NCBI RefSeq assembly: GCF_032191835.1
Contig: NC_083227.1
Location: 26,908,001 to 26,972,000, forward strand
DNA: 64,000 nucleotides
Source: Heteronotia binoei
Lineage: Eukaryota
Reading direction: 5' to 3'
The position numbers and the translations under genes were made by a program. This document shows, in pieces, positions 39,428 to 64,000 of the stretch. Position 1 is the first letter of the stretch. Each line of letters begins with the position of its first letter. The notes beneath the pieces are model-generated. The model made no database searches. It was given only the letters and a program-made list of their open reading frames with translations, and was not told the DNA's origin.

Positions 39428-40287
39428 TTATTGGATGCTTAATGCGAACATTTCTATGTGGTTTTTTTCATGTTTCAAAAGATGCTTTTGATGATGGAAA
39501 CCTTTCCCACAGGCAGAACAGTGGTATGGTTTCTCTGTGTGGGTCCGGTGGTGTATGACCAAGGTCGCGTTGCGGGCAAAGCACTTCCCGCAGACAGAGC
39601 ACTTGTGCGGTCTCTCCCCAGAATGAGTCTTGCCATGTAAAATTAGGGACGACTTGCAAGCAAACCCCTTCCCGCACGTCGGGCATTCGTAAGGTTTTTC
39701 CCCGGTGTGGATTCTTTCGTGGACGACAAGGTGTGACTTCGAACTGAAGCACTTCCCACAGGTCGAACACTTAAAGGGTCTCTCCCCAGTGTGGATACGC
39801 TCGTGGATGATAAGGTGCGAATTACGACTGAAGCGCTTCCCACAGACAGAACACTCATAAGGGTTGTCTCCCGTGTGAGATCTCTCATGAACAACGCGGT
39901 GGTAGCTCTGAGTGAAGGTTTTCCCACAGAAAGAGCATTTGTATGGTTTCTCCCCCGTGTGGGTCCTTTTGTGCCTAGTAATCTCTGAATTACTGCTGAA
40001 ACTCTTCCCACAGATTGTGCATTCGAATGGAGTCCCTTCTGCGTGGTGATCTAGGAGGGTTTCACTGAGGGCTTTGTTGGTCCCACCAAGAATGGACTTG
40101 CTCATTCTTTTCTTTGGCCGCTTCCTTGTGCTATCTCTAGAGTGGCTTCCTTCCTGCTTCCTGGGAGCACACTGATTCTGAGAAGACTGTTCCTTCTTCT
40201 GGAAGACATTCTCTGTCATCTTTCTTTGGGAAGGCCCAACCAGTCTGACTTCCTCTGTGTCCATCATGGTTGCTTCCCCACAAACCG
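39428..40287 (-). CDS. Gene C terminal exon: 7 C2H2 zinc fingers
   Basis: 7 C2H2 units; acceptor ttccattccAG at 40288-40289, phase 1. Confidence 0.94.
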
Positions 40288-40307
40288 CTGGAATGGAAAA
40301 AGTAATC

Positions 40308-40888
40308 ATAAGAACATAAGAGAAACCATGTTGGATCAGGCCAATGGCCCATCCAGTCCAACACTCTGTGTCACACAGTGGCCAAAAAACAAAAAAAAAG
40401 GAGGTTCATAAGTGGGGCTAGAAGCCCTTCCACTTTGCCCCCCCCCCCAGCACCAAGAATACAGAGCATCACTGCCCCAGACAGTTCCAATAACATGCTG
40501 TGGCTAATAGCCACTGATGGACCCCTGCTCCATATTTTTATCCAATCCCCTTTTGAAGCTGGCTATGCTTGCAGCCGCCACCACCCCCTGTGGCAGTGAA
40601 TTCCACATGTTAATCACCCTTTGGGGGAAGAAGTCATTCCTTTTATCCGTTCTAACCCGACTGCTCAGAAATTTCCTTGAATGCCCACGAGTTCTTGTAT
40701 TGTGAGAAAGGGAGAAAGGGACTCCTTTCTCTACTTTCTCCATCCCATGCATAATCTTATAAACCTCTATCATGTCACCCTGCAGTTGACGTTTCTCCAA
40801 GCTAAAGAGCTCCAAGCATTTTAACCTTTCTTCATAGGGAAAATGTTCCAACCCTTTAATCATTCTAGTTGCCCTTTTCTGCACTTTT
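40308..40888 (-). mobile_element. CR1 3' end abutting the gene C ZNF acceptor
   Basis: ORF 40504-40893 is CR1 RT; tail ends ~20 nt from the AG. Confidence 0.9.
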
Positions 40889-41294
40889 CCCAATCAGAAA
40901 TGAAGGATGGCTGAGGCTGAGAATAGGCTCTCAACTCTGAGCTGGGAAATTCCTGGAAATTTAGGGGCAAAGCCTGGGGAGGGTGGAGTTTGAAGAGGGA
41001 GGGAGCTCGGATGTGGTGCCACAGATTCCTACCCTCCAAAACCGCCATTTTTTTGTCTCCGGGGGAACTGATCTATGTAGTCTGGATTGCTTGTAATTCT
41101 AGGAGATCTCCAGTTCCTCCCTGGAGGTTGGAAACCCTTGCTGGTGGCTCTCCAGGGTCTCAGGTGGAGGTTTTCACATCACCTACTAGCTGATCCTTGA
41201 ATTGGAGATGCTGGGGATTGAACCTGGGACCTTCTGCATACAAAGCAGATGCTCTACCACTGAGCCACAGCCCCTCCCATGACTTAGATTGTGC

Positions 41295-41658: not shown

Positions 41659-43057
41659 CTGAAAGAGGAAAATTTCCTAATTTACAAAATGCAGAATCCA
41701 TTTTCTTTTAATGTTGCAGAAACTGCCGTGGGTAGGAAGAGAAAACTGGGTTGGTGACGGCATGGCTGCATTGCCAATTGGTGCTGGACACTGTGCTGCA
41801 AACAGGAAGAAGTTTCCACTGAGTGCCATTCTGGGGACATGATCGTACACCTGACTACAATATAGTTATTGAGCTTTTTTAGTGATAGGCCCTACACTCC
41901 TGACAAAAGACCAGAGTCTGCTTTTGAGCAATTAGTGTCTCGTTAAAGTTGCCAACTCCAGGTTGTGAACTTCCTGGAGATTTTGGAGGAAAAGCCTGGG
42001 AGGGCAGGGTTTGGGTAGGGGAGGGACCTTAGCGAGTTGTAGAGCCCACCTTCCAAAGCAGCCATTTTCATCAGGAAACTGAATCTGTCATCTAGAGATG
42101 AATTATAATTCCAGGCCTGACCTGTGAGTTGGCAACCCTAGTTCTAATGAATGTTTGGAGACAGGCAGGAGAGACACCAGAACTGACACTAAGAAACCTT
42201 CAGGTGGGTTGTCGTGTTGATCTGAAGCAACAGAACAAAGTTTGAATCCAGTGGCTCCTTTAAGACCAACGAAGTTTAATTCTGGGTATAAGCTTTTGTG
42301 TGCATGTACCTGAAAGCTTAGAATTAAACTCTGTTGGTCTTAAAGGTGCCACTGGACTCAAACGTTATTCTATCAAGAAACCTCAATTTCTTGCCTCGAG
42401 ACGGTGACAGCACACTGTAGATGAAACAACACAGTTGCCTTCTACAAAGCAAACCCAGGGCTTTTTTGAGCAGGAACGCAGTTCCTCCTGGCTTGGTGGT
42501 GGTGTGTGTGTTGCCTAATATACAAATGAACTCCTGCTGGGCTTTTTCTACCCCCCCCCCCCCAAAAAAGCCCTGAGCAGGGGTGGAATTCTAGCAGGAG
42601 CTCCTTTGCATATTAGGCCACACCTTCCTGATGTAGCCAATCCTCCAAGAGCTTACAAAAAAGAGCCTTGTAAGTTCTTGGAGGATTGGCTACATCAGGG
42701 AGCTCCTGCTAGAATTCCACCCCTGGCCCTGAGCAAGCCTATATACATATATGAACATATGAAGCTGCCTTCTACTGAATCAGACCCTCGTTCCATCAAA
42801 GTCAGTGTTGTCTACTCAGACTGGCAGCAGCTCTCCAGGGTCTCAAGCTGAGGTTTTTCACACCTATTTGCTTGGACCCTTTTTAGTTGGAGATGCCGGA
42901 GATTGAACCTGGGACCTTCTGCTTACCAAGCAGATGTTCTTCCACTGAGCCACCGCCCCTCCCTAAAGTCTATCAAGTTCTTTGTTCTCTTCTATTGGCA
43001 ATGTGTCTCAGAAGAAGGCAGAGAAAGGTGTCTCCTGACTTCTGCTGTCTGAGATAC

Positions 43058-43121: not shown

Positions 43122-43767
43122 CTAGAATTGCTCTGGATGCAGGTTGGGGAATGCCTGGAGATTGGGGGATGGAGCCTGGGGAGGACAGGGATCTCAGTGG
43201 GGTGCAATGCATCCATTTTCTCCAGAGGAACTGATCTTTGCAGTCTGGATATGAACTGTAATTCCAGGACAGGGTGGCCAAAATTGTGGCTCGGGAGCCA
43301 TGTGTGGCTCTTTCACACACATTGTGTCACTCTCAAAGCCTCCACTGCCTTGTCAGCCAGCTTGGAGAAGGCATTTGTCTCTTTAAATCACTTCTCCAAG
43401 CCATGCTTGGTGGCTTGGAGAATGCATTTAAAGTTAAATTTGCTTTCTTTCCACCTCTCNNNNNNNNNNNNNNNNNNNNNNNNNNNNNNNNNNNNNNNNN
43501 NNNNNNNNNNNNNNNNNNNNNNNNNNNNNNNNNNNNNNNNNNNNNNNNNNNNNNNNNNNNNNNNNNNNNNNNNNNNNNNNNNNNNNNNNTGATGTTCATG
43601 TCTTACGGCTCTCAAATATCTGATGTTTATTCTATGTGGCTCTTATGTTGAGCAAGTTTGGCCACCCCTGTTCCAGAAGATCCATGGGTCCCACCTGGAG
43701 GTTGGCATCCCTAGCTCTATCCCTGAACTATGGCCCATCTTTACCCACAGGCTGCATTCAGCCTCAC

Positions 43768-44178
43768 CCGTTGCCCTAGAACCATCATGAAATCCTCTGC
43801 AGCGGCCACAGCTTGGGTGCAGGTTTCTGGCTCGTATTCCCTGACCCAGCTCTGCATTTCTCCTGGAAGGACCGCCAGGAAGTGCTCCAGGATCAACAGG
43901 TCCAAGATCTCCTCCTTGGTACATTCCTCGGGTTTCAGCCACGCGTGGCAGAGGTTACGGAGCTGGGCGTAAGCCGTCTGTGGCCCTTTGGCCTCATGGA
44001 AGCGGAACTGCCGGAAGCGCTGCCGTTGCATCTCTGTTTCAACAGCTGCCCTTGGGAGAACGGTGATGTCTACCGTTGTCTTTCCTGTGTTCAGACTGCC
44101 AGCATCTCCTATGACACAAGGGGGACATTCTGCCTGGCTCACACCCTTCTGTCCTGATGCTTTCTCATCCATCACCAT
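43768..44178 (-). CDS. Gene C SCAN exon (pre-SCAN capsid part largely lost); upstream ATG at 44310 is blocked by TGA at 44290-44292
   Basis: QRQRFRQFRFHEAKGP...LILEHFLAVLPGEMQSWV; donor CGG|GTGAGG; acceptor at 44319. Confidence 0.8.
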
Positions 44179-45811
44179 CCTGAGGTGCTGCCAATGGTCC
44201 AGAGCAGCCTGCAGCTGGTCTCCCAAGGTCACCAGTAGCTCCTTCTCTGCAGTTATCTCACCAACTTGGACTGCTCCCACCTTTCCTTCTCAGAGATGCT
44301 CCAAATCCATGCTGTTCTCTGTATAAGCGGGGGAAGTCAGGATGCCTCCAAAAGTTGCATCAACTGGCCCAGTGGCATATCATGCTAGCTGTGCCAATGA
44401 AGTGGGTCTGCAAGCATTCCCAGGAGATGCTTCTTGTGAGTAGCAGCTCCTCCCTGTGGGAGAGAGATGATAAGATTTAACATAAGGAAGGCAAAGATGG
44501 CACAGAGCAGGGGTGGCTGAACTGTGGTTTGGGAGCCACATGTGGCTCTCTCAGACCTATTGCGTGGCTCTCAAAGCTCCTACCACCACTTCATTGGCTG
44601 GCTTGGAGAAGAAGAAGATGAAGGAGATGAAGATTTTGATTTATATCCCGCCCTATACTCTGAATCTCAGAGCGGTCACAATCTCCTATACCTTCCACCC
44701 CCACAACAAACACCCTGTGAGGTAGGTGGGGCTAAGAGTGCTTTTACAGCAGCTGCCCTTTCAAGGACAGCTTCTATGAAAGCTATGGCTGACCCAAGGC
44801 CATCTTAGCAGGTGCAAGTGCAGGAGTGGGGAATCAAACCCGGTTCTCCCAGATAAGAGTCCACGCACTTAACCCCTATACCAAACTGGCTCTCATAGAA
44901 GGCATTAGTGTGTTTAAATCGCTTTTCCAAGCCAAGCCAGCTGGTGGCTTGGACAGTGCATTAAAAGTTAAAGTTTCTTTCTTTCCACCTTCCCCTCCCT
45001 CCCCCTTCCATTTGCCTTCCTTCCTTTCTTTCAGTTCTCAAACATCTGATGTTCATGGCTTGTGGTTCTCAGACATCTGTTATTTATTCTATGTGGCTCT
45101 TATGGTAAGCAAGTTTGGCCACACCTGGTACAGAGGTTCTCCTTCTTTGGAGGTTTTTAAACAGAGATTGTACAGAGGCTCTCCTTCCTTGGAGATTCTT
45201 AAACAGAGGCTAGATGGCCATCTAACAGCAAGGCTGATTCTGTGAACTTAGGCTGGTCATGGGAAGGGTTGCATCACTGCTTAGTTCTCATGGCCCTTTC
45301 TTACATGTCCACAGAAATGCTGGTCACCACTTTGGGGTCAGGAAGCCATTTTCTCCAGGCCAGTTTAGCCAGAGATCCTGGAGGGGTTGTGTTTTTTTTT
45401 TGCCATCTTCTGGGCATGGAACGGGTCACTGGGAGTGGGGGGGGGGGAAGGTATTTGTGACTTTCCTGCATTGTGCAAGGGGTTGGACTAGATTACCCTG
45501 GAGGTCCCTTCCAACTCTATGGTTCTATGAGATTTCCAGGTCAGTTGAGGAGCTGCTCCTTCCTCTCCCGAAGAGTGGTAAATGAAATAATTCCTAACAC
45601 CAAGGGTCTATTATGCAAGCATACAGATGTAGTACAATGCAGAAAAAGGAGACGTTTTTAATATACCTCCTGCCAACTCCAGACGGCGGAGGAGGTGACT
45701 CTGCATATTAACTCACTGCCCACTTTCTCTATACTTAGGACTGCTTGCCATTCCATCCTATTGTCTGATGAAAAAGGTGCAAGTTGACTCTTGCTTTGTT
45801 CTTTGAACAAC

Positions 45812-48289: not shown

Positions 48290-51200
48290 AACATTTGCCT
48301 CAGAGCTGACTTCCACCAGTCTCTTGCTTCAAAGCCTGCCTGCCTTCCACCCCAATCCCTTGCCTCAGAGTCTGACTTCCACCCCAATCCCTTGCCTCAG
48401 AGTCTGACTTCCACCCCAATCCCTTGCCTCAGAGTCTGACTTCCACCCTAATCCCTTGCCTCAGAGCTGACTCCTGCCAGTCTCTTGCCTCGAAGCCTGC
48501 CTTCCACCCCAATCCCTTGCCTCAGAGTCTGACTTCCACCCCAATCCCTTGCCTCAGAGTCTGACTTCCACCCCAATCCCTTGCCTCAGAGTCTGACTTC
48601 CACCCCAATCCCTTGCCTCAGAGTCTGACTTCCACCCTAATCCCTTGCCTCAGAGCTGACTCCTGCCAGTCTCTTGCCTCGAAGCCTGCCTTCCACCCCA
48701 ATCCCTTGCCTCAGAGTCTGACTTCCACCCCAATCCCTTGCCTCAGAGTCTGACTTCCACCCCAATCCCTTGCCTCAGAGTCTGACTTCCACCCCAATCC
48801 CTTGCCTCAGAGTCTGACTTCCACCCTAATCCCTTGCCTCAGAGCTGACTCCTGCCAGTCTCTTGCCTCGAAGCCTGCCTTCCACCCCAATCCCTTGCCT
48901 CAGAGTCTGACTTCCACCCCAATCCCTTGCCTCAGAGTCTGACTTCCACCCCAATCCCTTGCCTCAGAGTCTGACTTCCACCCTAATCCCTTGCCTCAGA
49001 GCTGACTCCTGCCAGTCTCTTGCCTCGAAGCCTGCCTTCCACCCCAATCCCTTGCCTCAGAGTCTGACTTCCACCCCAATCCCTTGCCTCAGAGTCTGAC
49101 TTCCACCCTAATCCCTTGCCTCAGAGCTGACTCCTGCCAGTCTCTTGCCTCAAAGCCTGCCTTCCACCCCAATCCCTTGCCTCAGAGTCTGACTTCCACC
49201 CTAATCCCTTGCCTCAGAGCTGACTCCTGCCAGTCTCTTGCCTCAAAGCCTGCCTTCCACCCCAATCCCTTGCCTCAGAGTCTGACTTCCACCCTAATCC
49301 CTTGCCTCAGAGCTGACTCCTGCCAGTCTCTTGCCTCAAAGCCTGCCTTCCACCCCAATCCCTTGCCTCAGAGTCTGACTTCCACCCTAATCCCTTGCCT
49401 CAGAGCTGACTCCTGCCAGTCTCTTGCCTCAAAGCCTGCCTTCCACCCCAATCTCTTGCCTCAGAGTCTGACTTCCACCCTAATCCCTTGCCTCAGAGCT
49501 GACTCCTGCCAGTCTCTTGCCTCAAAGCCTGACTTCCACCCCAATCTCTTGCCTCAGAGTCTGACTTCCACCCTAATCCCTTGCCTCAGAGCTGACTCCT
49601 GCCAGTCTCTTGCCTCAAAGCCTGCCTTCCACCCCAATCCCTTGCCTCAGAGTCTGACTTCCACCCTAATCCCTTGCCTCAGAGCTGACTCCTGCCAGTC
49701 TCTTGCCTCAAAGCCTGCCTTCCACCCCAATCCCTTGCCTCAGAGTCTGACTTCCACCCTAATCCCTTGCCTCAGAGCTGACTCCTGCCAGTCTCTTGCC
49801 TCAAAGCCTGCCTTCCACCCCAATCCCTTGCCTCAGAGTCTGACTTCCACCCTAATCCCTTGCCTCAGAGCTGACTCCTGCCAGTCTCTTGCCTCAAAGC
49901 CTGCCTTCCACCCCAATCCCTTGCCTCAGAGTCTGACTTCCACCCTAATCCCTTGCCTCAGAGCTGACTCCTGCCAGTCTCTTGCCTCAAAGCCTGCCTT
50001 CCACCCCAATCCCTTGCCTCAGAGTCTGACTTCCACCCTAATCCCTTGCCTCAGAGCTGACTCCTGCCAGTCTCTTGCCTCAAAGCCTGCCTTCCACCCC
50101 AATCTCTTGCCTCAGAGTCTGACTTCCACCCTAATCCCTTGCCTCAGAGCTGACTCCTGCCAGTCTCTTGCCTCAAAGCCTGACTTCCACCCCAATCTCT
50201 TGCCTCAGAGTCTGACTTCCACCCTAATCCCTTGCCTCAGAGCTGACTCCTGCCAGTCTCTTGCCTCAAAGCCTGCCTTCCACCCCAATCCCTTGCCTCA
50301 GAGTCTGACTTCCACCCTAATCCCTTGCCTCAGAGCTGACTCCTGCCAGTCTCTTGCCTCAAAGCCTGCCTTCCACCCCAATCCCTTGCCTCAGAGTCTG
50401 ACTTCCACCCTAATCCCTTGCCTCAGAGCTGACTCCTGCCAGTCTCTTGCCTCAAAGCCTGCCTTCCACCCCAATCCCTTGCCTCAGAGTCTGACTTCCA
50501 CCCTAATCCCTTGCCTCAGAGCTGACTCCTGCCAGTCTCTTGCCTCAAAGCCTGACTTCCACCCCAATCTCTTGCCTCAGAGTCTGACTTCCACCCTAAT
50601 CCCTTGCCTCAGAGCTGACTCCTGCCAGTCTCTTGCCTCAAAGCCTGACTTCCACCCCAATCTCTTGCCTCAGAGTCTGACTTCCACCCTAATCCCTTGC
50701 CTCAGAGCTGACTCCTGCCAGTCTCTTGCCTCAAAGCCTGCCTTCCACCCCAATCCCTTGCCTCAGAGTCTGACTTCCACCCTAATCCCTTGCCTCAGAG
50801 CTGACTCCTGCCAGTCTCTTGCCTCAAAGCCTGCCTTCCACCCCAATCCCTTGCCTCAGAGTCTGACTTCCACCCTAATCCCTTGCCTCAGAGCTGACTC
50901 CTGCCAGTCTCTTGCCTCAAAGCCTGCCTTCCACCCCAATCCCTTGCCTCAGAGTCTGACTTCCACCCTAATCCCTTGCCTCAGAGCTGACTCCTGCCAG
51001 TCTCTTGCCTCAAAGCCTGACTTCCACCCCAATCTCTTGCCTCAGAGTCTGACTTCCACCCTAATCCCTTGCCTCAGAGCTGACTCCTGCCAGTCTCTTG
51101 CCTCAAAGCCTGCCTTCCACCCCAATCCCTTGCCTCAGAGTCTGACTTCCACCCTAATCCCTTGCCTCAGAGCTGACTCCTGCCAGTCTCTTGCCTCAAA

Positions 51201-52610
51201 GCCTGCCTTCCACCCCAATCCCTTGCCTCAGAGTCTGACTTCCACCCTAATCCCTTGCCTCAGAGCTGACTCCTGCCAGTCTCTTGCCTCAAAGCCTGCC
51301 TTCCACCCCAATCCCTTGCCTCAGAGTCTGACTTCCACCCTAATCCCTTGCCTCAGAGCTGACTCCTGCCAGTCTCTTGCCTCAAAGCCTGCCTTCCACC
51401 CCAATCCCTTGCCTCAGAGTCTGACTTCCACCCTAATCCCTTGCCTCAGAGCTGACTCCTGCCAGTCTCTTGCCTCAAAGCCTGCCTTCCACCCCAATCC
51501 CTTGCCTCAGAGTCTGACTTCCACCCTAATCCCTTGCCTCAGAGCTGACTCCTGCCAGTCTCTTGCCTCAAAGCCTGCCTTCCACCCCAATCCCTTGCCT
51601 CAGAGTCTGACTTCCACCCTAATCCCTTGCCTCAGAGCTGACTCCTGCCAGTCTCTTGCCTCAAAGCCTGCCTTCCACCCCAATCTCTTGCCTCAGAGTC
51701 TGACTTCCACCCTAATCCCTTGCCTCAGAGCTGACTCCTGCCAGTCTCTTGCCTCAAAGCCTGACTTCCACCCCAATCTCTTGCCTCAGAGTCTGACTTC
51801 CACCCTAATCCCTTGCCTCAGAGCTGACTCCTGCCAGTCTCTTGCCTCAAAGCCTGACTTCCACCCCAATCCCTTGCCTCAGAGTCTGACTTCCACCCTA
51901 ATCCCTTGCCTCAGAGCTGACTCCTGCCAGTCTCTTGCCTCAAAGCCTGACTTCCACCCCAATCCCTTGCCTCAGAGTCTGACTTCCACCCTAATCCCTT
52001 GCCTCAGAGCTGACTCCTGCCAGTCTCTTGCCTCAAAGCCTGACTTCCACCCCAATCCCTTGCCTCAGAGTCTGACTTCCACCCTAATCCCTTGCCTCAG
52101 AGCTGACTCCTGCCAGTCTCTTGCCTCAAAGCCTGACTTCCACCCCAATCCCTTGCCTCAGAGTCTGACTTCCACCCTAATCCCTTGCCTCAGAGCTGAC
52201 TCCTGCCAGTCTCTTGCCTCAAAGCCTGACTTCCACCCCAATCCCTTGCCTCAGAGTCTGACTTCCACCCTAATCCCTTGCCTCAGAGTCTGACTTCCAC
52301 CCTAATCCCTTGCCTCAGAGCTGACTCCTGCCAGTCTCTTGCCTCAAAGCCTGACTTCCACCCCAATCCCTTGCCTCAGAGTCTGACTTCCACCCTAATC
52401 CCTTGCCTCAGAGCTGACTCCTGCCAGTCTCTTGCCTCAAAGCCTGACTTCCACCCCAATCCCTTGCCTCAGAGTCTGACTTCCACCCCAGTCCAGACTT
52501 CTATCCCAATCCCTTGCCTCAAGAACCCAACTTCTGCCTCAGAGCTGGCTCCCACCATAGTCTCTTGCCTCAAAGCCTAACTTCTACCCCAACCCCTTGC
52601 CTTAGAGCGG
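48290..52610. repeat. tandem array: 93-bp higher-order unit (32+29+32 bp related monomers), ~35 homogeneous copies plus a monomer-rich left portion
   Basis: the 31-aa periodicity of ORF 49084-52293 equals 93 bp; shared core CTTGCCTC..AG in every subunit. Confidence 0.95.
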
Positions 52611-53498: not shown

Positions 53499-53829
53499 NN
53501 NNNNNNNNNNNNNNNNNNNNNNNNNNNNNNNNNNNNNNNNNNNNNNNNNNNNNNNNNNNNNNNNNNNNNNNNNNNNNNNNNNNNNNNNNNNNNNNNNNNN
53601 NNNNNNNNNNNNNNNNNNNNNNNNNNNNNNNNNNNAAGCAGGCTGATGGGAGTATGGTATCTCAATGCAATGACTATACTTTATTAACTATATCTGCACC
53701 AAGTACATTTTATTAACAATAAGGCACATCAACTGGATACAAACATTAGAATTAAACACAACATTGACACTGATGTCAGCAAGAGAAAAGGGGCACCCTG
53801 AATTCTGGATATTTTCCTTTGCCTCTGCG

Positions 53830-54410
53830 TGCCCCTTTGGGCATTACACAGAGCCAGTGATAGGTGAATGATTGCTTACATACATCACATTTATATGTCT
53901 TCTCATCTACCAGCTACTTCATGGTGTGGATTCTCTCATGGACTACAGAACTGTGACTTCCAGTTGAAGCTCTTCCTGCAGTACAAGCACTTGTGGAGTT
54001 TCAGATTGGCATGAGACCTTCCATGCAGATTAAGATGGCTGTTCTGCCTGAAGCCAATCCCACCGTAACATCTGCACTAATTCCATCTGGTGTGTGTGTG
54101 GGGGGGTTCTCTTGCGTGCAACCCACTGTCAACTCTGGCTGAGGGCTTTTGAGCAGTGGGATCATTAATTGGGCTTCTCCCCATGTAGACGGCAAGCTGA
54201 GACCTCTCAATGGTCTTTCCACAGAAAGAACATTCACACAGGCCACTCTCTGGTAGGACTCACTGGTAGCTTGCAAGGGGATCATTGCATCGAAGGCCTT
54301 TCTTGACAAAAAATAAAAGTTCTGTCACATAAAAGGTGGCTCCACGGACTCCAGCTTTACATTTGGCTTCTGCTGCTGTGGGGTTTCATTGACAGCCTTC
54401 TCACTTGCTG
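53830..54410 (-). pseudogene. decayed C2H2 zinc-finger exon of paralog D
   Basis: remnants ECSFCGKTIERSQLAV, HKCLYCRKSFNWKSQ..VVHERIHT and YKCDVCKQSF, broken by frameshifts and stops. Confidence 0.75.
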
Positions 54411-55250: not shown

Positions 55251-57004
55251 GTTTGGTATTTTGAAAACAGGCATGACCAACCACAAAATGGCTGCCATGG
55301 GGCCAATCAGAAAACACTGGGTAGCTCCAACCTCAATGTTCTTTGGTATGGCGAAGAAAGCCATTGGCACCAAGGAACACCATATCGGGTATCATTGGCT
55401 AAGAGGATGAGAGTGAACACAAACACCACCCAAATGGGTAGGGTTGCCCAATCCAATTCAAGAAATATCTGGGGACTTTGGAGGTGGAGCCAGGAGCAAG
55501 GTTGTGACACGCATGACTGAACTCCAAAGGGAGTTCTGGCCATCACATTTAAAGGGACAGCACACCTTTTAAATGCCTTCCCTTCATTGGAAATAATGAA
55601 AAATAGGGGCACCTTCTTTGGGGGCTCATAGAATTGGACCCCCTGGTCCAATCCCTTTGAAACTTGGAGGGTACTTTGAGGAGAGGCACTGGATGCTATG
55701 CTGCAAATTTGGTGCCTATAACTCAAAAAACAGGCCCTCCCAAGCCCCAAATACCAGCAGAACAATTCTTCATTATACCCTATGGCAGGGTTTCCCAAAC
55801 TTTTATTTCCTGTGGCCCGCTTATTTTTACACTTCTCCTTCATGACCCACTAAAATTTGGGGGTACATCCAGGAGACTTTGGGGGTGGAGCTGGGAGACA
55901 GGAATTATGCCATTTCCTGTGGTGTCAAGGGTCAAGTGATGTCACTTCTGGGGCACACTGAACCAAAAAGCCACCTTTTCCTGTGATGTCACTTCCAGAA
56001 TGTCCACAAGTGGAGCCAGGGGACTAGAAGCCCTCCCACTGTTGCTTCCCCCCCTCCCAGCACCAAGAATACAGACAGAGCATCACTTGCAGGGAAAGAA
56101 AGAGGGGGGGGGGGGAAGCCTTCCTCGCCATCAGATGACGTCAGCCAGCAATAATTCTGCCATGGGGTCGTTCGGTTAAAAAAAAAAAATACTGGAATGC
56201 CCACTCCCCGCTGAAAAAAACACACACACCCTTCTTTGCCGCCCAGGCCTCCCGGAGGAATCTCCCCAAAAGAACATACTGAAAGGCACAGGAAAGCTCA
56301 TACCCTGAAGAACACTTCATGGATCTAAAGTGCCAGTGCATGCCAGCTTTACTCTCAAACATTGGGAGGGGAGGAGAAGAAAAGAGAGGCAGCCCAGCTC
56401 CTCTCTGCACAACACAGAGACGGGGGAAGGAAGAAAGCCAGAGCTCAGGCTTTGCAGCCTGTGTCAGTCTTCAAGGCTAGCTTTTCTCTGCACAACAGAG
56501 AGATGGGGGAAGGAAGGAAACAGAGCAAAGGTCATGCTTTGCTGGGGACGGAGCTAGCTTGGCTGGGGACAGGGCTAGCTTTGGCTTTTCTTGTGACCTG
56601 GTAGTGAGGCTTCTGTGGTCCGGTGCCAGGTCACGACCCTGCAAATGGGAAACATTGCCCTATAGGTATCGGTCTTCATAGGGAATAATGGAGTGCCCAG
56701 CAGACATTCTCCCCCCCCCCTGCTTTCTGATGATCCTGAAGCAGGGGGAGGGCCTCCAAACCGGGGAATCCCCTGCCCCCACCTGGGGATTGGCAACCCT
56801 ACAACTGGGGGCCATTTTTAAGGCTGCCAAGATGCTATTGTGGCCAATGTGAAAAGAATCCAAGTCCTTTCTCTTCTGCCTTGTTCCCCAACCAGGCCCT
56901 CCCTCAAACAAAACTGAAACACCAAGAGCAGGGAGAGATCAACCCTTAAGTGCCAAGACCAATTTGCCCTCATCCACTGCATCCTTTTTGCTATCCCTTC
57001 TTAC

Positions 57005-57720
57005 CTATGAAGGAAAACCTCAGCCAGGATCACTGCCTGGGCACAAGTTTCGGGGCTGCGTTCCCTGATCCTCTTCTGGCTGTCAAAGGCAGGATGCTCA
57101 ACAGCTGCTCAAGGAACAGCAGCTCCAAGATTTGGGCTTTCAAACATTTCTCCACCCTCAGTCATTGATGACAAAGTTTCTTGAACTGGCTGTAAGTCTT
57201 TCGTGGCTGCTCGGCCTGCTGGTAGCAGAAACACTAGAAGTGTTGACGCCGCTTCTCTGTCCTCATGGTGTCTTGTCATAAGATGGCCGCCTTCAACTTC
57301 CTGTAGCTCTCCTTGTCTCTGGCCTCCAGCTTGTCAAAGGCAGCTGGGTTTCTCCTCTTGAGGGCCAAAAGGAGTCCAGTCACCCACTCCTCTCTGGGCC
57401 ACTGACAGGCTTTGGCCACTTGCTCGAAGGCCAGAAAGGCCTTGGCATAATCCCACAGAGCAGGCCCCCCTGGCAGCTGTGAGGCACCCCAACCTAACTG
57501 AGGGGACTCCAGTTTCTTCAGGATCTCCTGCCACTGGGTTTTCTAAGTCTAGTACAATTCCACCCTTGACCTCTCATTACTACAGGAATTCCCTGATATT
57601 CCCGGCTTCAACAATGGACACCATGTCTCCTAGTTTGTGTCTGAAGGATTCAAGCACCTGTGTATGTATCTCTCTGTACCAAAGACTGCCCCCATCCCAT
57701 TTCGCAAAAATGTCAATGAA
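57005..57720 (-). pseudogene. extended-SCAN pseudo-exon of paralog D
   Basis: [52 protein letters not shown], with stops at 57276-78, 57234-36 and 57162-64 and a frameshift. Confidence 0.9.
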
Positions 57721-57819: not shown

Positions 57820-58270
57820 CAGCATAAGCTTTGAGTTCTCCAGAATTCTTCTACAGAGGCCAGATGCCTGGAACATCCTACATGGCATGAAACGTATTCG
57901 AAAGGGACTGCAAGCTTTCAAGTCCTCCAGAACTTTCCGGCAAGCTGGATGCTTGTTATTAATATTGTTTAATTAAAAAAGCATTTTAGAAGGACAGGAA
58001 TGGAAGCTTTTGAGTCCTCCAGAACTTTTCGGCAGGCTAGATGCCAAAGGGAGAGGAAGTTTAATAGCAAGCATCCAAGCCTGCCAAAATGCTCTGGAGG
58101 AAAGCTTGCAGTCCCGTCCTTCTGAGAGGATTCAGGTCTTCTAAGATGTTTCCAGTCATGTAAGAGGTTTCAGGTTTCCTTCCAAAAGGGGGAGGAGGTT
58201 CAATAACAAGCATCGAGCCTGCCGTAATGTTCCAGAGGACTCAAAAGTTTGCATTCCCTTCCTTCTGAGA
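57820..58270. repeat. foldback-like array: three direct and two inverted degenerate ~60-85-bp units
   Basis: AAGCTTT..GAGTCCTCCAGAAC...GGCAGGCT.GATGC at ~57826, 57912 and 58004; reverse complements at ~58060 and 58200. Confidence 0.75.
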
Positions 58271-58860
58271 TGGAGAACTTTATACCACAATATTTTTAAA
58301 ATATATAAATCTTTATGAACATTTCAATGCAAAACTCAACTGCAAGAGAGCCAGAAGGCACCCCACAAGAGACAAAAGGAAGTCAAACTAATCCAGGGAC
58401 AAGAGATCACAGCAAGCATAGGCCCCCAAATCCAAACATACACTTTCGACACACACAGACACTTCACTCACTCACTCTCTCTCACAAGCACACCATTTCC
58501 CTGCGTCCTAAGAAAAATGAGAAGGAAGAGGGTTTTAAACACACAAGCTCTCCTTTCTCTTGGCAAGCTGAGGCCTATACCATCACTGGCTCAGAAGAGC
58601 CTCAACAGCTTCAGTTGCCCTTTATCTCTGGAACTTCTGGAAGTTGTAGGATTGAAGATCCAGTAACAGAACTTTACCCCATTTCCTTCCCTCAAGAAAG
58701 AAGGACCCAAGAATCAGAAGGGCCACACAACTACTGTACTAATCTAAAACAGAAGGGCGAAAGGAAAGAGACAGAGAGAGAAGGGGGTAGCCTTTCGTCC
58801 CAATCCTGAGAGATTGAACGAGGGCAGCCACAAAGAAGCCTCCATACAAGCCCACACACA

Positions 58861-61053
58861 TCACTCGCTCTCAAAGGCCAGTTCCGGATAGTTCAAGAAC
58901 GGCAAGTTGACCTTCAAGAAGGCCAACTCCTCCAGATTTAAAGGGTATATGTCTGAAATGGTAACCTCGTCTGAACAGGCCAGTTTGCTCTGAACCCTGG
59001 CGGCAGGGCAGGAGAGGAGTTCCTGGGCCACGAGAGACAGGCCAGGCCACACAGCCTCCTTTTGGGCCCAATAGCTCAAGGGGTCAGCATCAGGGGACTC
59101 GCAGGGCTCCACGAGGTACTCAATCACCATTGCCTCTGCCCAGTCCTCCTTCCCCTGCCTCTCACTCCCGCTAACAGTTCCCCTGACTACACTCCGCACA
59201 AGTTCCGCCTCAGGAGCAGCGAGGCAGGATAAGTGGCTGGCAGAAGGGTATGGGAGGAGAGCGCCCTCCTCCATTCTTGCTGGTGTGACCATGCCCCTCT
59301 TGGCTTGAAAGTCCCTCACACGTTGAGCGAGCTCATCTCTCCAGGGGTGCAGAGCATTGTCACGCAGGGCAATGGCGCCCTTGACCCGGGGGTCACACAG
59401 GGTGGCCAGCATGTAGATCAGCTTCTGAGCGAGAGGCTGCAGATGCGCTTCAATCCCCCTTTGCAGCCTCCGCACTAGGGTTTCCACCGGTGGGTGGAGC
59501 TGAGAGCCGTCCTGACCTTGGTTGGAAAACGCAGCCAAGTCCTCCTGAAGCTTCTGGATCAGGGGAACGACCAGACCCAGGCTAGCCGTGGGGCGGCTGA
59601 GCATCTCCGTGAAGTCCTTAAAGAGCTTCAAGACAAGCAGCGTCTGGGAGAGTGTCTGCCACTCCCTGCAGGAAAGCGGTCTCTTTCCCGGCACGAGGTC
59701 GACCACTTCGGCAACTCGGCGCACGGCGTTCTTCTGCTCCAGAAGGCGCTCGATCATAGCGTAGACGGTCGTCCAGCAGGTGGCCACGTCGTCAATCAGG
59801 GGGTCATCCGGCACATCGGACTCTTCCTGCTTCTCCCCCAGCAGCCTCCTGGCTTCAATGCTGCTGCTGAAGTGAGCCCCGATTCTCCGGCATTCCTCCA
59901 GCAGGCACCACAGTTCACAGCCCGCGGCATCCCAGCCCGCCGGCCTGGAGGAACCCAAACCGAGTGCATCGTTCGCCACAAGGTCAAGGAGGTGTGTAGT
60001 GCACAGAATGCGCGTTAAGGACAAGTCACTCACTGCTGCCAAAACTTCGGCACCACCATCCGTTACCATAAAACCTCTGGCAACACCTTGGCCCACCCAA
60101 GCCTCTATCTGCTGCTTGACAACACCGGACAGGTCAGACACCGAATCCGCCGGACCCAAAACCTGGGCATGAAGCAAAGCCCGATGGTAACCCGCCTTGT
60201 AGCCGGTCTCCTCCTTCCTAAAGCTGCTCTGCCCCCCACCCACAGCATCCTCCATTTGCCACCAGTGTGCAGTCAATAACAGGTAGGTATACTCTGTCTG
60301 GGAGCAGGTCCAGATGTCTGAGGTGAAGTGCACAGTCCGCCCCTGGGCCTGGGACAACTGTGACTTCACAAGCTCCTTGATGGACTGATAAAGGGAGCGC
60401 AGGATGGTGCTACACAGCTTCTCGCAAGAAGGGAGCTCATACCAGGGAATGAAAAGCTGGAGCAACCCTTGGAAACCAGCGTTCTCGACAATGTTCACTG
60501 GAAAATCATCCACAGCAATCATCTCACAGATTAGGCGAGTGAACTTTTGAGAATCAGAATGGGACAAGCTGGCAGGAACTGATGACAGGGGGACAACGGA
60601 CTGAGAGGACAACCTGTGCGCCGTCTTTTCCCGCCCTGTGTCCGAAGAGCAGCTGGGCTGCCCATGACCTGGAGAAGTGAGGCCTACACCCAGCTCATGA
60701 AATGCCCTCAGGAAGACTGCCTCACTCCACTGAGTCTTTGCCACAGAGGTCTCCCCAGAAGACAGTTCTTGCTGCCGTTCCAAAGTCAAACTCGCAGCTA
60801 CCAGCGCCTTCCCTGCATTGCCTGTCTCAGAAGGTTGACGTTTAGGAGGCAGAACAGCAGTCTCTTGGGAAACAGTCTTACAAGGCTGCTTGTTGGTGGT
60901 ACCCCAACAGGGGGATGGGCAGCTGCTGAGGTTTGGGTGCTCTTGAGGCCTACCAATGGCCTGAGGGGTAGCCAGAGCACTTCTGTTATCTTCACCCAGA
61001 TTACTCTTGCGCTTCGCCTTACCCCAAAAGCCCCTCCCTCTAGCCTCACTCAT
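58861..61053 (-). CDS. hAT-transposase-derived protein (ZBED4/ZBED6/Ac-type core), 730 aa, probably domesticated and catalytically inactive
   Basis: TSDIWT (D1), VTDGG (D2), CTTH (CxxH), DVATCW, LATLCDPR, DPLSYW...LSCPA dimerisation domain; SER motif replaced by SKL; real ATG with an in-frame stop just upstream; no internal stops. Confidence 0.88.
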   Translation of the reverse strand: MSEARGRGFWGKAKRKSNLGEDNRSALATPQAIGRPQEHPNLSSCPSPCWGTTNKQPCKTVSQETAVLPPKRQPSETGNAGKALVAASLTLERQQELSSGETSVAKTQWSEAVFLRAFHELGVGLTSPGHGQPSCSSDTGREKTAHRLSSQSVVPLSSVPASLSHSDSQKFTRLICEMIAVDDFPVNIVENAGFQGLLQLFIPWYELPSCEKLCSTILRSLYQSIKELVKSQLSQAQGRTVHFTSDIWTCSQTEYTYLLLTAHWWQMEDAVGGGQSSFRKEETGYKAGYHRALLHAQVLGPADSVSDLSGVVKQQIEAWVGQGVARGFMVTDGGAEVLAAVSDLSLTRILCTTHLLDLVANDALGLGSSRPAGWDAAGCELWCLLEECRRIGAHFSSSIEARRLLGEKQEESDVPDDPLIDDVATCWTTVYAMIERLLEQKNAVRRVAEVVDLVPGKRPLSCREWQTLSQTLLVLKLFKDFTEMLSRPTASLGLVVPLIQKLQEDLAAFSNQGQDGSQLHPPVETLVRRLQRGIEAHLQPLAQKLIYMLATLCDPRVKGAIALRDNALHPWRDELAQRVRDFQAKRGMVTPARMEEGALLPYPSASHLSCLAAPEAELVRSVVRGTVSGSERQGKEDWAEAMVIEYLVEPCESPDADPLSYWAQKEAVWPGLSLVAQELLSCPAARVQSKLACSDEVTISDIYPLNLEELAFLKVNLPFLNYPELAFESE

Positions 61054-61899
61054 CCTTCACTACCCCTTCCTAAAACTAGGCCAAGCCCTCTCAAAGACAC
61101 ACACACACCCCTTCACAAGGATATACTACGCAAACGCACCCCAGCACGCACAAACAACCAGTCACCCACAGAATGTGAATGCACAACACAAATGGCTGTA
61201 AAAATCTGAAAACAAACAAAAGGAACAGGTTAAAAAACAGCAGCCTCCCCAATTTTTAGAAAAAGTCTGTCACAAAACAAAGCTAAAAGCAACCCCCTCC
61301 AAACAAATAAACTCAAATCAGGAAATTAAAAAAATAAAATTAAAAATCCAGACCCACCAACAGTCAGCAAACAAACCAACAGTAAAACAAACAGTCGACA
61401 AAATCTAAGAACAGGTTTCCCCTACCCTGCCTACACCCTATTCCAGAAAATATAAGGGGATTCCTCCCTAACTAAACTCTCCAGGGAAATAGCTCAAGTC
61501 TTTCCCAGCAGGTTTCCCCAGGCAGCTCTCTGGGAAACAGTTGTGCTTCAACCCAGTCTGCTTATATTTTCCTCCCAGAGTCCTCTCAGAGTTTCTTCAT
61601 GGCCATGGATTGTCCTCCAAAGAGATGGTCTTTCAATGCACTGGACTAAAACTGGACACTTTTTGACAAAAAAGGCGATCAGGCAGTCAAGAACATGAGA
61701 GGATCGTTCCTGGAAGAGAAGGAGGACAAGCTACATAAGGATAATGCATGCACAAAAAGATTTGTCTCAAAATCTACACATCCCTCTTGCATCACATGAC
61801 CCAAACGGCCCAGAATGCTTTTCTGCACAACATAACTCCCATTATCCCTTCAACCCCACCACAAGAACCCAGACTAGGGCATTAGGAGGCAACTAAACA

Positions 61900-62185
61900 G
61901 CCCCGTGGTGCAGTGTTAAAACTGCAGTACTGCAGTCCTAAGCTCTGCTCATGACCTGAGTTCGATCCCCGGCGGAAGCTGGATTTTCAGGTAGCCAGCT
62001 CGAGTTTGACTCAGCCTTCCATCTTTCCAAGGTTGGTAAAATGAGTACCCAGCTTGCTGGGGGGAAAGCGTAGATGACTGGGGAAGGCAATGGCAAAACC
62101 CTCCCCCGTAAAACGTCTGCAGTGAAAATGTTGTGAAAGCACCCCAGAATCGAAAACGACTGGGGCTTGCACAGGGGACCTTTCC
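61900..62185 (+). mobile_element. Sauria SINE
   Basis: GTGGTGCAGTGTTAAAACTGCAGTACTGCAGTCC head and consensus body. Confidence 0.85.
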
Positions 62186-62370: not shown

Positions 62371-62511
62371 ATAAGATCTTTGCGTGGTATCTAAAGAAGT
62401 GTGCATGCACAAGAAAGCTTATACCCGCCCAGAGTTAAACTTTGTTGGTCTTAAAGGAGCCTCTGGACTCAAACTTTTGTTCTATTGCTTGGGGCCAACA
62501 CACACAAAAGG

Positions 62512-62793
62512 GTAAAGGTAGTCCCCTGTGTAAGCACCAGTCGTTTTTGACTCTGGGGTGACGTTGTTTTCACAACATTTTCACGGCAGACTTTTTACGG
62601 GGTGGTTTGCCATTGCCTTCCCCAGTCATCTACACTTTCCCCCCCAAGCAAGCTCAGGGGGACCTCGGAAGGATGGAAGGCTGAGTCAACCTGGAGCCAG
62701 CTACCTGAACCTAGCTTCCGCTGGGATCGAACTCAAGTCGTGAGCAGAGGGCTCCGACTGCAGTACTGCAGCTTTACCACTCTGCGCCACCGC
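62512..62793 (-). mobile_element. Sauria SINE, inverted relative to 61900-62185
   Basis: reverse-complement consensus. Confidence 0.85.
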
Positions 62794-62799
62794 CCAATT

Positions 62800-63480
62800 A
62801 ATCTGATGGTTGTTCGAGTCCTCAATAAATGCGGATTGTTATGCTGCAGGCTGGGGCGTGCGTATTTGTGAATGCAACTGCACATCCTTCGCCCTGCGCC
62901 TTCTGAAAGCTGCACCACTTGCCCTGGCCCAAAGGCGCACCAACGCATCCCGCCGCCTTGCAATCCCGCCCCCTTCTTCCCTTACCCACGGCGGTTTACC
63001 CTTGCAAAAGTTTTCCCCACTGGAAGTTGCAGCCCGGGCCCGGGAAGGGAGATCGCAAAACAAACAAAAGGCGGCCTTCCAAAAGGAAAAGCCGCTCGCA
63101 GGTTTCTAGGAATCAAATGCAAAACTTCAGAATTGCACTTTTGGGACGGTTGCCCGGAGACTGGCGACTGACTGGCCTTGGGTTGCCTCGTTTATAACCC
63201 CTTCGCTCTCCTGTCCCGATTCACTGCTTGCTTAGGGTAGTTGGGTGCAGAGCCTGCAAGCAAAGCCTCTCTATCCCAGATCCACAGTACTCAGCCTAGG
63301 TGGCCTACCTTTTCTGGCGGCGTTTGGCGACTCCGAGCAGAGGCGCAGCTCCTTCCACCGAGACCTGGTTCTAGGGAACCACGTGGCCTGTTCGCGGGCC
63401 TTAAGTATAAACCAGCACCACGCCCCCCTCCCGGCTTTGAATACCCTCCTGGGCGGGGCTGCAGTCGCCTGTCCTTCCTA
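62800..63480 (-). promoter_or_regulatory. CpG island / probable first exon for the transposase-derived gene (and ancestrally paralog D)
   Basis: CpG-rich with GGGGCGGG boxes; donors GG|GTAAGG at 62985 and AG|GTAGGC at 63308; candidate acceptor ttttacAG near 61197. Confidence 0.6.
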
Positions 63481-63599
63481 GGCAGGGGTCATTCCATAGA
63501 AATAGAGGTGCCGGAGCTCATTAGCACACTTCATTTGCATAGCTCCTTGGCATATGCAGCACACCCCGGACATCCCCAAAAAGTGAACTAAATTATATC

Positions 63600-64000
63600 A
63601 GATAGATCCAAGCAGGCAGGCGTGTTGGTCTGAAGTAGTAGAACAAAATAGGAGTCGATTGCACCTTTAAGACCAAATTAGTTTTGTTGAGAACGTCAGC
63701 TTTTGTGCGCCCTCTAAGCACGCTTCATCAGACGAGGGATCCGGCACAGTGAGCAGGGCCATACATAACTGGAGGCAGTGGCCCAGAATGCAACATAGTG
63801 CAATGACAGTGAAGTAAAATTATCTGGTAAAATGGTACAAATATAAGATTTAATGACAGAATAGCAAAATTAACAAATTGAGCAAACCTTTGATCTGAGT
63901 AGCATGAGCATGTGAAAGCAACGAAACAGCAGTATGTCAAATTGTGAGAGTATCTGTCAGTGACTCTATTGCTATGGTCCTGGGCCAAAAGGAAGGAATA
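63600..64000. mobile_element. Penelope-like element end with a degenerate hammerhead (63693-63734, minus), running off the window
   Basis: same terminal sequence as 3655 and 19688; CGT-CTGATGA-A-stem-AAAA-GCTG-ACG. Confidence 0.55.

What the first reader, a model, noticed from the sequence alone, without database searches (positions are those of the whole stretch)
58861..61053. Intact but catalytically dead hAT transposase gene inside a SCAN-ZNF cluster
Seen: a 730-codon stop-free ORF, whereas the neighbouring LINE fragments and paralog D are broken or truncated. The first two acidic residues (TSDIW, VTDGG), CxxH (CTTH) and the W of the RW motif are kept, but R is changed to C. The third catalytic Glu of the PAsSvpSERxFS motif is Lys (PAARVQSKLACS, codon 58984-58986). 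No BED zinc finger is recognisable in the ~170-aa N-terminus, and I found no TIRs or 8-bp TSD around it. Established: hAT enzymes need the DDE triad, and ZBED-type genes arose by domestication of such elements. Inference: a lineage-specific domesticated protein acting as a scaffold, dimerisation partner or dominant-negative transposase inhibitor rather than an enzyme.
Basis: partly seen in the sequence, partly recalled or inferred. Interest (0 to 1): 0.78.

Follow-up and report, generated by a model that had tools for sequence, protein, structure and literature searches.

The report
Fingerless dead hAT transposase gene, gecko
A former "jumping gene" enzyme survives in this gecko as an intact 730-codon gene copy that can no longer cut DNA and has lost its DNA-binding zinc finger. 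It is a fairly ordinary extra member of an already tamed transposase gene family, and whether it still works is unproven.

Summary
Window 58861-61053 (-) is an intact 730-codon ORF with a Hermes-like hAT fold. It keeps D246 and D332 and the CxxH motif. The third catalytic Glu is Lys (K690), and RW has become CW. It has no BED finger, no TIRs and no target-site duplication.

It is not a fresh, lineage-specific domestication. It belongs to a squamate and amphibian "ZBED4-like" family and is sister to a Eublepharis gene at 46% identity. The next clade consists of SCAN-C2H2-BED-hAT fusion genes.

The frame has been kept open over a synonymous divergence of about 1.1 from that sister gene (dN/dS about 0.42). 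A 2.2-kb frame evolving neutrally would rarely survive beyond 1-2% divergence. The core keeps 83 of 91 family-conserved positions, but this branch is accelerated compared with its sister.

The only recent evidence is three small DNA runs at about 97-98% identity, with 7 non-synonymous and 2 synonymous changes. This cannot separate weak constraint from recent release. No RNA evidence was found.

Best reading (0.55): a non-catalytic, finger-less paralogue that acts through protein contacts. Main rival (0.3): a newly silent relic.

The "promoter capture / intron 1" idea is not supported. Earlier notes of this scan describe similar hAT-derived genes elsewhere in this genome.

The parts
58861..61053 (-). 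Intact single-exon ORF of 730 codons plus TGA: a hAT/ZBED4-like derived protein
   Evidence: homology runs the full length to P0001, P0002 and P0003
60553..61053 (-). N-terminal 167 residues: predicted disordered, with a basic stretch near the start. The first ~60 residues are homologous to the N-terminus of P0001. The BED zinc finger present in relatives is missing.
59284..60552 (-). RNase-H-like catalytic core with the inserted all-helical domain (residues 168-590), pLDDT mostly above 90, matching Hermes
60316..60318 (-). D246, equivalent to Hermes D180 (kept)
60058..60060 (-). D332, equivalent to Hermes D248 (kept; the sister P0001 has N here)
59992..60003 (-). C351..H354, the CxxH motif (kept)
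59773..59778 (-). C426-W427: the RW motif with R replaced by C (codon TGC; relatives have CGT/CGG). P0001 shares this change.
58984..58986 (-). K690 (AAA) in place of the third catalytic Glu (Hermes E572). The surrounding, otherwise near-invariant LSCPPTSVxSERVFS motif is eroded.
58864..59133 (-). hAT C-terminal dimerisation region (residues 641-730; the Pfam PF05699 hit covers 645-696 only). This segment has the lowest dN/dS against P0001 (0.23).
61205..61222 (-). Candidate 3' splice site (pyrimidine tract plus AG at 61207-61206) about 150 nt upstream of the ATG. It would make the ORF the coding exon behind a non-coding first exon. Inferred from sequence only.
62500..63750 (.). CpG-rich stretch (CpG o/e 0.62-0.74, against 0.1-0.35 in neighbouring DNA) 1.5-2.7 kb upstream. 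A candidate promoter, partly made of SINE copies, and untested.
56977..57542 (-). Context: the 5'-truncated, frameshifted SCAN exon of dead SCAN-ZNF paralogue D, directly downstream of the ORF

Best explanation
The ORF is a single-exon, immobile paralogue of the squamate and amphibian 'ZBED4-like' family of hAT-transposase-derived genes. Its closest known relative is a Eublepharis gene that lies beside histone genes. It most likely arose by duplication of an already non-mobile gene. It then lost the BED zinc finger and eroded two active-site motifs (the E572 equivalent became K, the R318 equivalent became C), so it can neither cut DNA nor bind DNA through a BED finger. These points are shown. 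What remains well preserved is the folded RNase-H-like and helical-insertion body and the C-terminal hAT oligomerisation region. By inference, the protein therefore acts through protein-protein contacts. The most plausible mode is forming mixed oligomers with BED-bearing relatives encoded in the same genome, as a modulator or dominant negative. Selection kept the frame open for nearly all of its independent history, though constraint was looser than on its sister gene. Current expression and function are not shown.
For: Fold and family: Hermes is the top structural match (E 8e-16, TM 0.64-0.70 by target), and PF05699 scores above its cut-off. The ORF is sister to P0001 with 97% SH-aLRT support inside a squamate and amphibian clade.

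Long-term constraint: against P0001 the core has dN 0.47 and dS 1.12, giving omega 0.42. The C-terminal domain has omega 0.23. The ORF keeps 83 of 91 core columns that are at least 80% conserved in the family, the same as P0001. A neutral 2.19-kb frame keeps at least a 5% chance of staying open only up to 0.9-1.9% divergence.

Internal control: the adjacent SCAN-ZNF paralogue D is frameshifted and its ZNF exon has decayed.

Not a mobile copy: no TIR or TSD, no second copy in the window, and similarity to P0001 is confined to the CDS.

The start is ancestral: N-terminal homology to P0001 begins at Met1, and stops lie directly upstream.

In three DNA runs of organism A, about 538 bp of the ORF is present at about 97-98% identity without indels or stops.
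Against: No RNA run holds the sequence, so transcription is unshown. The branch is accelerated at conserved positions: 39 unique changes against 18 in P0001, chi-square 7.7. The most conserved family motif is eroded and only part of the dimerisation profile matches. The recent changes against organism A are 7 non-synonymous and 2 synonymous. That fits omega near 1, although it is not significantly different from the long-term 0.5 of that segment. No orthologue above 46% identity exists in the protein libraries, but these libraries also lack gecko orthologues of P0001, so this absence says little. Heteromerisation with paralogues is pure inference.
Confidence: 0.55

Rival explanations
1. Recently released relic. 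The paralogue was a working gene for most of its history but lost function recently, for example with the loss of the BED finger or of its promoter. It is now a silent pseudogene whose frame has simply not been hit yet.
For: BED finger gone. Catalytic and dimerisation motifs eroded. About 2-fold excess of changes at conserved sites against the sister gene. 7 non-synonymous against 2 synonymous recent changes. No RNA holder. It sits beside a dead gene with no recognisable promoter cassette. An open frame is still compatible with up to about 1-2% neutral divergence.
Against: The 2.19-kb frame has no stop or indel. Core conservation equals that of the annotated sister gene. The C-terminal domain has omega 0.23. 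CpG o/e is 0.6-0.7 in the middle of the ORF against about 0.2 in the flanks. The 7:2 count does not differ significantly from this segment's long-term omega.
Confidence: 0.3
2. The terminal coding exon of a larger fusion gene, for example SCAN-hAT as in its relatives, whose upstream exons lie beyond the end of the window.
For: The next clade (Eublepharis, Pogona) and an Anolis relative are SCAN-(C2H2)-BED-hAT fusions. The locus lies in a SCAN-ZNF cluster. There is a plausible acceptor at 61206-61207.
Against: Two in-frame stops lie directly upstream of the ATG. The protein's N-terminus aligns from Met1 with the fusion-free P0001 and P0002. No SCAN exon lies on the minus strand between 61054 and 64000.
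Confidence: 0.07
3. A copy of a hAT transposon, young or non-autonomous, rather than a host gene.
For: Clear hAT ancestry. This genome is reported to hold recently active hAT elements (earlier AI note s1-333623, unchecked).
Against: No TIR or TSD. The active site is disabled and there is no DNA-binding finger, so it cannot be autonomous. The nearest relative anywhere is only 45-46% identical. There is no other copy in 64 kb. The organism A runs hold a single form at about 97-98% identity and no swarm of variants.
Confidence: 0.03

Closest known systems
Eublepharis macularius 'zinc finger BED domain-containing protein 4-like' (P0001, 902 aa, single exon, beside H3/H1/H2B genes)
   Same: Sister in the tree (97% support). 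46% identity over the whole core. Shared N-terminal start. Shared R->C in the RW motif. Also damaged at the third catalytic position, by a deletion. Single coding exon.
   Different: P0001 keeps a (weak) BED finger and about 160 more N-terminal residues, has N at the second Asp, and lies in a histone cluster rather than a SCAN-ZNF cluster. A dS of about 1.1 suggests paralogy rather than orthology.
C7ORF29 / ZBED6CL, the BED-less relative of ZBEDX and ZBED6 (Hayward et al. 2013, PMC3606216)
   Same: A hAT-derived host ORF that lost its BED domain yet keeps an open frame, and was argued on that basis to be under constraint.
   Different: C7ORF29 is truncated to a short part of the catalytic domain plus the C-terminus, and it is mammalian. 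The gecko ORF keeps the entire catalytic core and insertion domain and belongs to a different clade.
Vertebrate ZBED4 (and the wider ZBED1/4/6 group)
   Same: Homologous hAT core and C-terminal domain (28-29% identity, E about 1e-48 to 1e-50). Single coding exon. Catalytically altered: ZBED4 has G at the first Asp.
   Different: ZBED4 has BED fingers and keeps the RW and SERxFS motifs. The gecko ORF falls in a separate clade from ZBED4 and has no finger.
SCAN-(C2H2)-BED-hAT host-transposase fusion genes of squamates (P0017/P0164/P0165 Eublepharis, P0019 Pogona, P0003 Anolis); for the general phenomenon see Cosby et al., bioRxiv 10.1101/2020.05.07.082677
   Same: Same hAT family. The next clade in the tree. 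They reside with SCAN or C2H2 genes.
   Different: They carry SCAN, C2H2 and BED modules. The window ORF carries none of these and starts at its own Met.
Hermes transposase (PDB 2BW3, 4D1Q, 8SJD)
   Same: Same fold over about 580 aligned columns, with motif-by-motif correspondence.
   Different: Hermes is an active enzyme with the full DDE triad, RW motif, BED-like N-terminal domain and TIRs. Here E572->K, R318->C, no finger and no TIRs.

Membership tests
hAT transposase superfamily (by descent) | RNase-H-like catalytic core interrupted by a large all-helical insertion domain | tested here: met
   AF2 model with pLDDT above 90 over most of residues 165-590. Foldseek top hits are all Hermes, E 8e-16 to 1e-11. 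The family profile hits Hermes at E 3e-62.
hAT transposase superfamily (by descent) | hAT C-terminal dimerisation domain (PF05699) | tested here: met
   29.2 bits against a cut-off of 21.4, but only profile positions 4-58 of 84 are matched.
Active or autonomous hAT transposon | Complete DDE triad plus CxxH and RW motifs | tested here: not met
   D246, D332 and CxxH are kept. The E572 equivalent is K690 and the R318 equivalent is C426.
Active or autonomous hAT transposon | Terminal inverted repeats flanked by an 8-bp target-site duplication | tested here: not met
   0 TIR+TSD candidates within 2.3 kb downstream and 2.9 kb upstream, against 0-1 in shuffles. The inverted-repeat list has nothing convincing.
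Active or autonomous hAT transposon | Multiple near-identical copies in the genome | not testable with these tools
   Only the 64-kb window is available, and it holds no second copy. The best relative in 15 billion proteins is 45% identical.
ZBED gene family (BED-finger proteins derived from hAT) | At least one BED zinc finger | tested here: not met
   No PF02892 hit at E<=1. All conserved ligand columns are substituted. No remnant in any frame.
ZBED gene family (BED-finger proteins derived from hAT) | Orthology to ZBED4 | tested here: not met
   28-29% identity. Mammalian ZBED4 and its near relatives form a separate clade that was used as outgroup.
Domesticated (host-retained) transposase gene | Long-term purifying selection on the coding sequence | tested here: met
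   Core pN 0.35 against pS 0.58, omega 0.42 against P0001. The open frame is maintained over a dS of about 0.5 per branch, whereas neutral survival is limited to about 1-2% divergence.
Domesticated (host-retained) transposase gene | Current or recent purifying selection among close orthologues | tested here: inconclusive
   Nine differences to organism A over 538 bp, 7 non-synonymous and 2 synonymous, with no indels. This excludes omega of about 0.2 or lower (p about 0.02, my binomial) but not 0.5 or 1.
Domesticated (host-retained) transposase gene | Syntenic orthologues in other species | not testable with these tools
   No gecko genome can be searched here. The organism A contigs are about 250 bp and carry no flanks.
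Domesticated (host-retained) transposase gene | Transcription and translation | tested here: inconclusive
   No RNA run among the holders. The tool itself says this does not show silence.

The most novel reading that the evidence does not exclude
A finger-less, catalytically dead hAT-derived protein is kept in gekkonid geckos as a dedicated non-DNA-binding subunit. It co-oligomerises through the hAT C-terminal domain with BED-bearing and SCAN-C2H2-BED-hAT paralogues and tunes or antagonises them. This would be a natural dominant-negative layer inside a family of transposase-derived transcription factors.
Probability: 0.15. Interest if true: 0.5.

Novelty: new member of a known kind. Interest (0 to 1): 0.3.

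Why it matters
If it is functional, it adds a second, independent case beside mammalian C7ORF29/ZBED6CL in which a tamed hAT transposase is kept after losing its DNA-binding finger. Here the whole catalytic body survives. That would make it a convenient natural test of what the non-catalytic, non-DNA-binding body of ZBED-type proteins does. If it is a newly silent copy, it merely documents turnover in a transposase-derived gene family that is expanding in squamate SCAN/C2H2 clusters. Either way it is not a new principle.

Tried and rejected
1. I first read the E->K as a change shared with P0002 and inherited from a dead common ancestor. The tree places P0002 elsewhere, E->K recurs in at least three separate clades, and it sits on an AGC|GAG CpG. 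I dropped that reading.

2. Blocks conserved upstream of the SCAN exons of paralogues A, B and C (about 15730-15940, 36626-36932 and 44497-45122) have no counterpart upstream of the ORF. D's SCAN exon is 5'-truncated at about 57540, and no missing piece lies upstream. Not supported within the window.

3. Orthology with P0001 by synteny. The window holds no histone genes, and there is no flank similarity beyond shared SINEs.

4. A search for a closer Eublepharis copy next to the P0165/P0164 pair found none. P0017 could not be located.

5. The sequence search against PDB gave nothing. The fold search and the profile search did.

6. Findings look-ups by sequence returned blanks, which are uninformative.

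It gave only three small DNA runs and no RNA run, so expression could not be examined.

8. The 1069-aa ORF at 49084-52293 is a minisatellite artefact, not a gene.

Full report
**Observation.** Window 58861-61053 on the minus strand holds an uninterrupted ORF of 730 codons plus TGA. Two in-frame stops lie immediately upstream of its ATG. Pfam recognises only the hAT C-terminal dimerisation region, at residues 645-696 with 29.2 bits against a cut-off of 21.4. An AlphaFold2 model built on a 68-sequence family alignment has mean pLDDT 77. Residues 1-151 are disordered and most of 165-590 and 640-730 exceeds 90. Its best structural matches are all Hermes transposase entries, with E from 8e-16 to 1e-11 and TM by target of 0.55-0.70.

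A profile alignment to Hermes fixes the residue equivalences:
- D246 corresponds to D180.
- D332 corresponds to D248.
- C351/H354 correspond to CxxH.
- C426-W427 correspond to R318-W319.
- K690 (codon 58984-58986) corresponds to E572.

The missing BED finger is also confirmed:
- Pfam finds nothing in the first 170 residues at E<=1, whereas the relatives scanned with the same library do hit zf-BED.
- Every family-conserved BED column is substituted.
- No remnant is detectable in any frame.

A dedicated scan for 8-bp duplications bracketing inverted termini found none, the same as in shuffled flanks.

**Family placement.** Word-based and exhaustive protein searches give the same picture. The nearest protein anywhere is a Eublepharis macularius "ZBED4-like" protein (P0001, 45-46% identity). 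Next come unnamed Logan ORFs (P0002, P0018), then squamate and amphibian "ZBED4-like" proteins at 35-44%. True ZBED4 is at 28-29%. In a maximum-likelihood tree of 29 core sequences, the window protein is sister to P0001 (SH-aLRT 97). That pair is sister to a Eublepharis+Pogona pair (support 98).

The Eublepharis+Pogona proteins, and an Anolis relative, carry SCAN and in part C2H2 modules in front of BED-hAT. In Eublepharis they form a tandem pair. The ORF is therefore one more paralogue of an older family that already behaves like host genes. It is not a new domestication. P0001 itself has no close gecko orthologue in the libraries either. The lack of an orthologue for the window ORF therefore reflects database coverage and cannot support "lineage-specific".

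**What changed.** Compared with all full-length relatives, the protein keeps its ancestral start: residues 1-61 align with P0001 from Met1 at E 6e-4. It lacks about 160 N-terminal residues, including the finger. In the core it retains 83 of 91 columns that are at least 80% conserved in the family, the same score as P0001. Its losses cluster in the RW motif and in the otherwise near-invariant LSCPPTSVxSERVFS motif.

Both active-site changes are CpG-type transitions: CGN to TGC for R->C, and AGC|GAG to AGC|AAR for E->K. E->K has arisen independently in at least three other members. The R->C is shared with P0001. This suggests, but does not prove, that their common ancestor was already immobile, so that the two arose by gene duplication.

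**Gene or decaying copy?**
- Nei-Gojobori estimates against P0001 give dN 0.47 and dS 1.12 (omega 0.42) for the core, and 0.23 for the C-terminal domain. pN (0.35) is far below pS (0.58).
- In this ORF, 3.1% of weighted substitutions create stops. Adding frameshifting indels at 0.05-0.15 per substitution, a neutral copy keeps at least a 5% chance of an open frame only up to 0.9-1.9% divergence. Well over 95% of the branch since the split from P0001 must therefore have been under selection for an open frame.
- The adjacent SCAN-ZNF paralogue D serves as a local control. Its SCAN exon is truncated and frameshifted, and its ZNF exon has decayed to about 30% identity.
- Against this, a Tajima-type test at sites conserved in outgroups shows 39 unique changes on this branch and 18 on P0001 (chi-square 7.7). 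Constraint has therefore been looser here.

**Recent history.** The only near-identical public data are three small DNA runs of one coded organism and study. Their ~250-bp contigs cover 59411-59948 at about 97-98% identity with no indels. The nine reliable differences are seven non-synonymous steps (one codon carries two) and two synonymous steps, and none creates a stop. By my binomial arithmetic this rejects strong constraint (omega of about 0.2, p about 0.02). It does not reject omega 0.5, which is the long-term value of that segment, or omega 1. No 99-100% contig was present, so these contigs are most simply an orthologue in a related lineage and not a second copy. No RNA run held the sequence, and the tool warns that this does not show silence.

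**Surroundings.** The window is a minus-strand SCAN-ZNF cluster. SCAN exons lie at 13091-13927, 32391-33143, 43765-44076 and 56977-57542, and ZNF exons at 8673-9497, 25300-26490 and 39428-40309. Short blocks conserved upstream of the SCAN exons of the three intact-looking paralogues have no counterpart upstream of the ORF. D's SCAN homology stops abruptly at about 57540, and no missing piece appears further upstream. The earlier suggestion that the ORF sits in D's first intron and captured its promoter therefore has no support inside the window.

A pyrimidine tract with AG at 61207-61206 could be the acceptor of a non-coding first exon. A CpG-rich stretch at 62.5-63.7 kb could be a promoter, but it partly consists of SINE copies. 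Both are sequence-only inferences.

**Mechanism.** These points are shown: the protein cannot carry out hAT catalysis as known from Hermes, because the E572 and R318 equivalents are lost, and it lacks the BED finger that its relatives use for DNA recognition. The rest is inferred. The conserved body and the most constrained part, the C-terminal oligomerisation region, point to a role through protein contacts. The most plausible mode is mixed oligomers with BED-bearing paralogues. I put 0.55 on "still a functioning, non-catalytic, finger-less gene", and only about 0.15 on the specific dominant-negative or partner model. I put 0.3 on a newly silent relic, 0.07 on an exon of a larger fusion gene, and 0.03 on a transposon copy.

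**Comparison with the known.** The closest precedent in kind is C7ORF29/ZBED6CL, a BED-less hAT-derived ORF judged to be constrained because its frame is conserved (PMC3606216). Host-transposase fusions with SCAN and KRAB domains are a described, recurrent phenomenon (bioRxiv 10.1101/2020.05.07.082677). Earlier notes of this scan are AI notes that I did not check, apart from seeing the Eublepharis counterparts. They name the genome as the gecko Heteronotia binoei and report several other hAT-derived genes in it. One of these lies in a histone cluster and would be the likely orthologue of P0001. The present ORF is thus a new member of a known kind.

**Limits.**
- No genome-wide copy count, synteny test or RNA evidence was possible.
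- dS near 1 is partly saturated, so omega values are approximate.
- The organism and study behind the three DNA runs are coded.

Noticed in passing
window 48340-52481: A 93-bp minisatellite with 44 copies, 96% matches and very strong GC skew (about -0.5). It produces a spurious 1069-aa ORF at 49084-52293 (+) with no Pfam match.
   Followed up: partly
window 53809-54301 and 56977-57542 (-): SCAN-ZNF paralogue D is a pseudogene. Its SCAN exon is 5'-truncated at about 57540 and frameshifted near 57085, and its ZNF exon is only about 30% identical to its paralogues.
   Followed up: partly
window 15730-15940, 36626-36932, 44497-45122: Short blocks conserved upstream of the SCAN exons of three SCAN-ZNF paralogues. 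They are candidate shared first-exon or promoter cassettes, and they are absent upstream of paralogue D and of the hAT ORF.
   Followed up: no
window 41203-41274 and 42888-42960 (-): Two tRNA-Thr-like predictions (anticodons TGT and GGT) lie 1.7 kb apart between SCAN-ZNF genes. They could be genuine tRNA genes or tRNA-derived SINE heads.
   Followed up: no
window 61912-62179 and 62521-62781: Two copies of a tRNA-derived SINE-like repeat in inverted orientation (79% identical to each other), with further copies at 14200-14440, 1443-1667 and 22568-22682. They contribute to the CpG-rich stretch upstream of the ORF.
   Followed up: no
window 57864-58272: A dense nest of inverted and direct ~60-bp repeats (83% complementary arms) lies in the 3' flank of the ORF, between it and the truncated SCAN exon. 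It is possibly a MITE-like or foldback element at the rearrangement breakpoint.
   Followed up: no
L003 (Eublepharis CM053280.1, about 187.41-187.44 Mb): A tandem pair of hAT-derived genes: a 924-aa C2H2-BED-hAT gene followed about 8 kb downstream by a 1040-aa SCAN-C2H2-BED-hAT gene, both lying inside the span of another called gene.
   Followed up: partly
window 59250-60250: The middle of the ORF keeps CpG o/e at 0.6-0.73, while the flanking DNA is at 0.1-0.3. This is compatible with coding constraint or germ-line hypomethylation.
   Followed up: no
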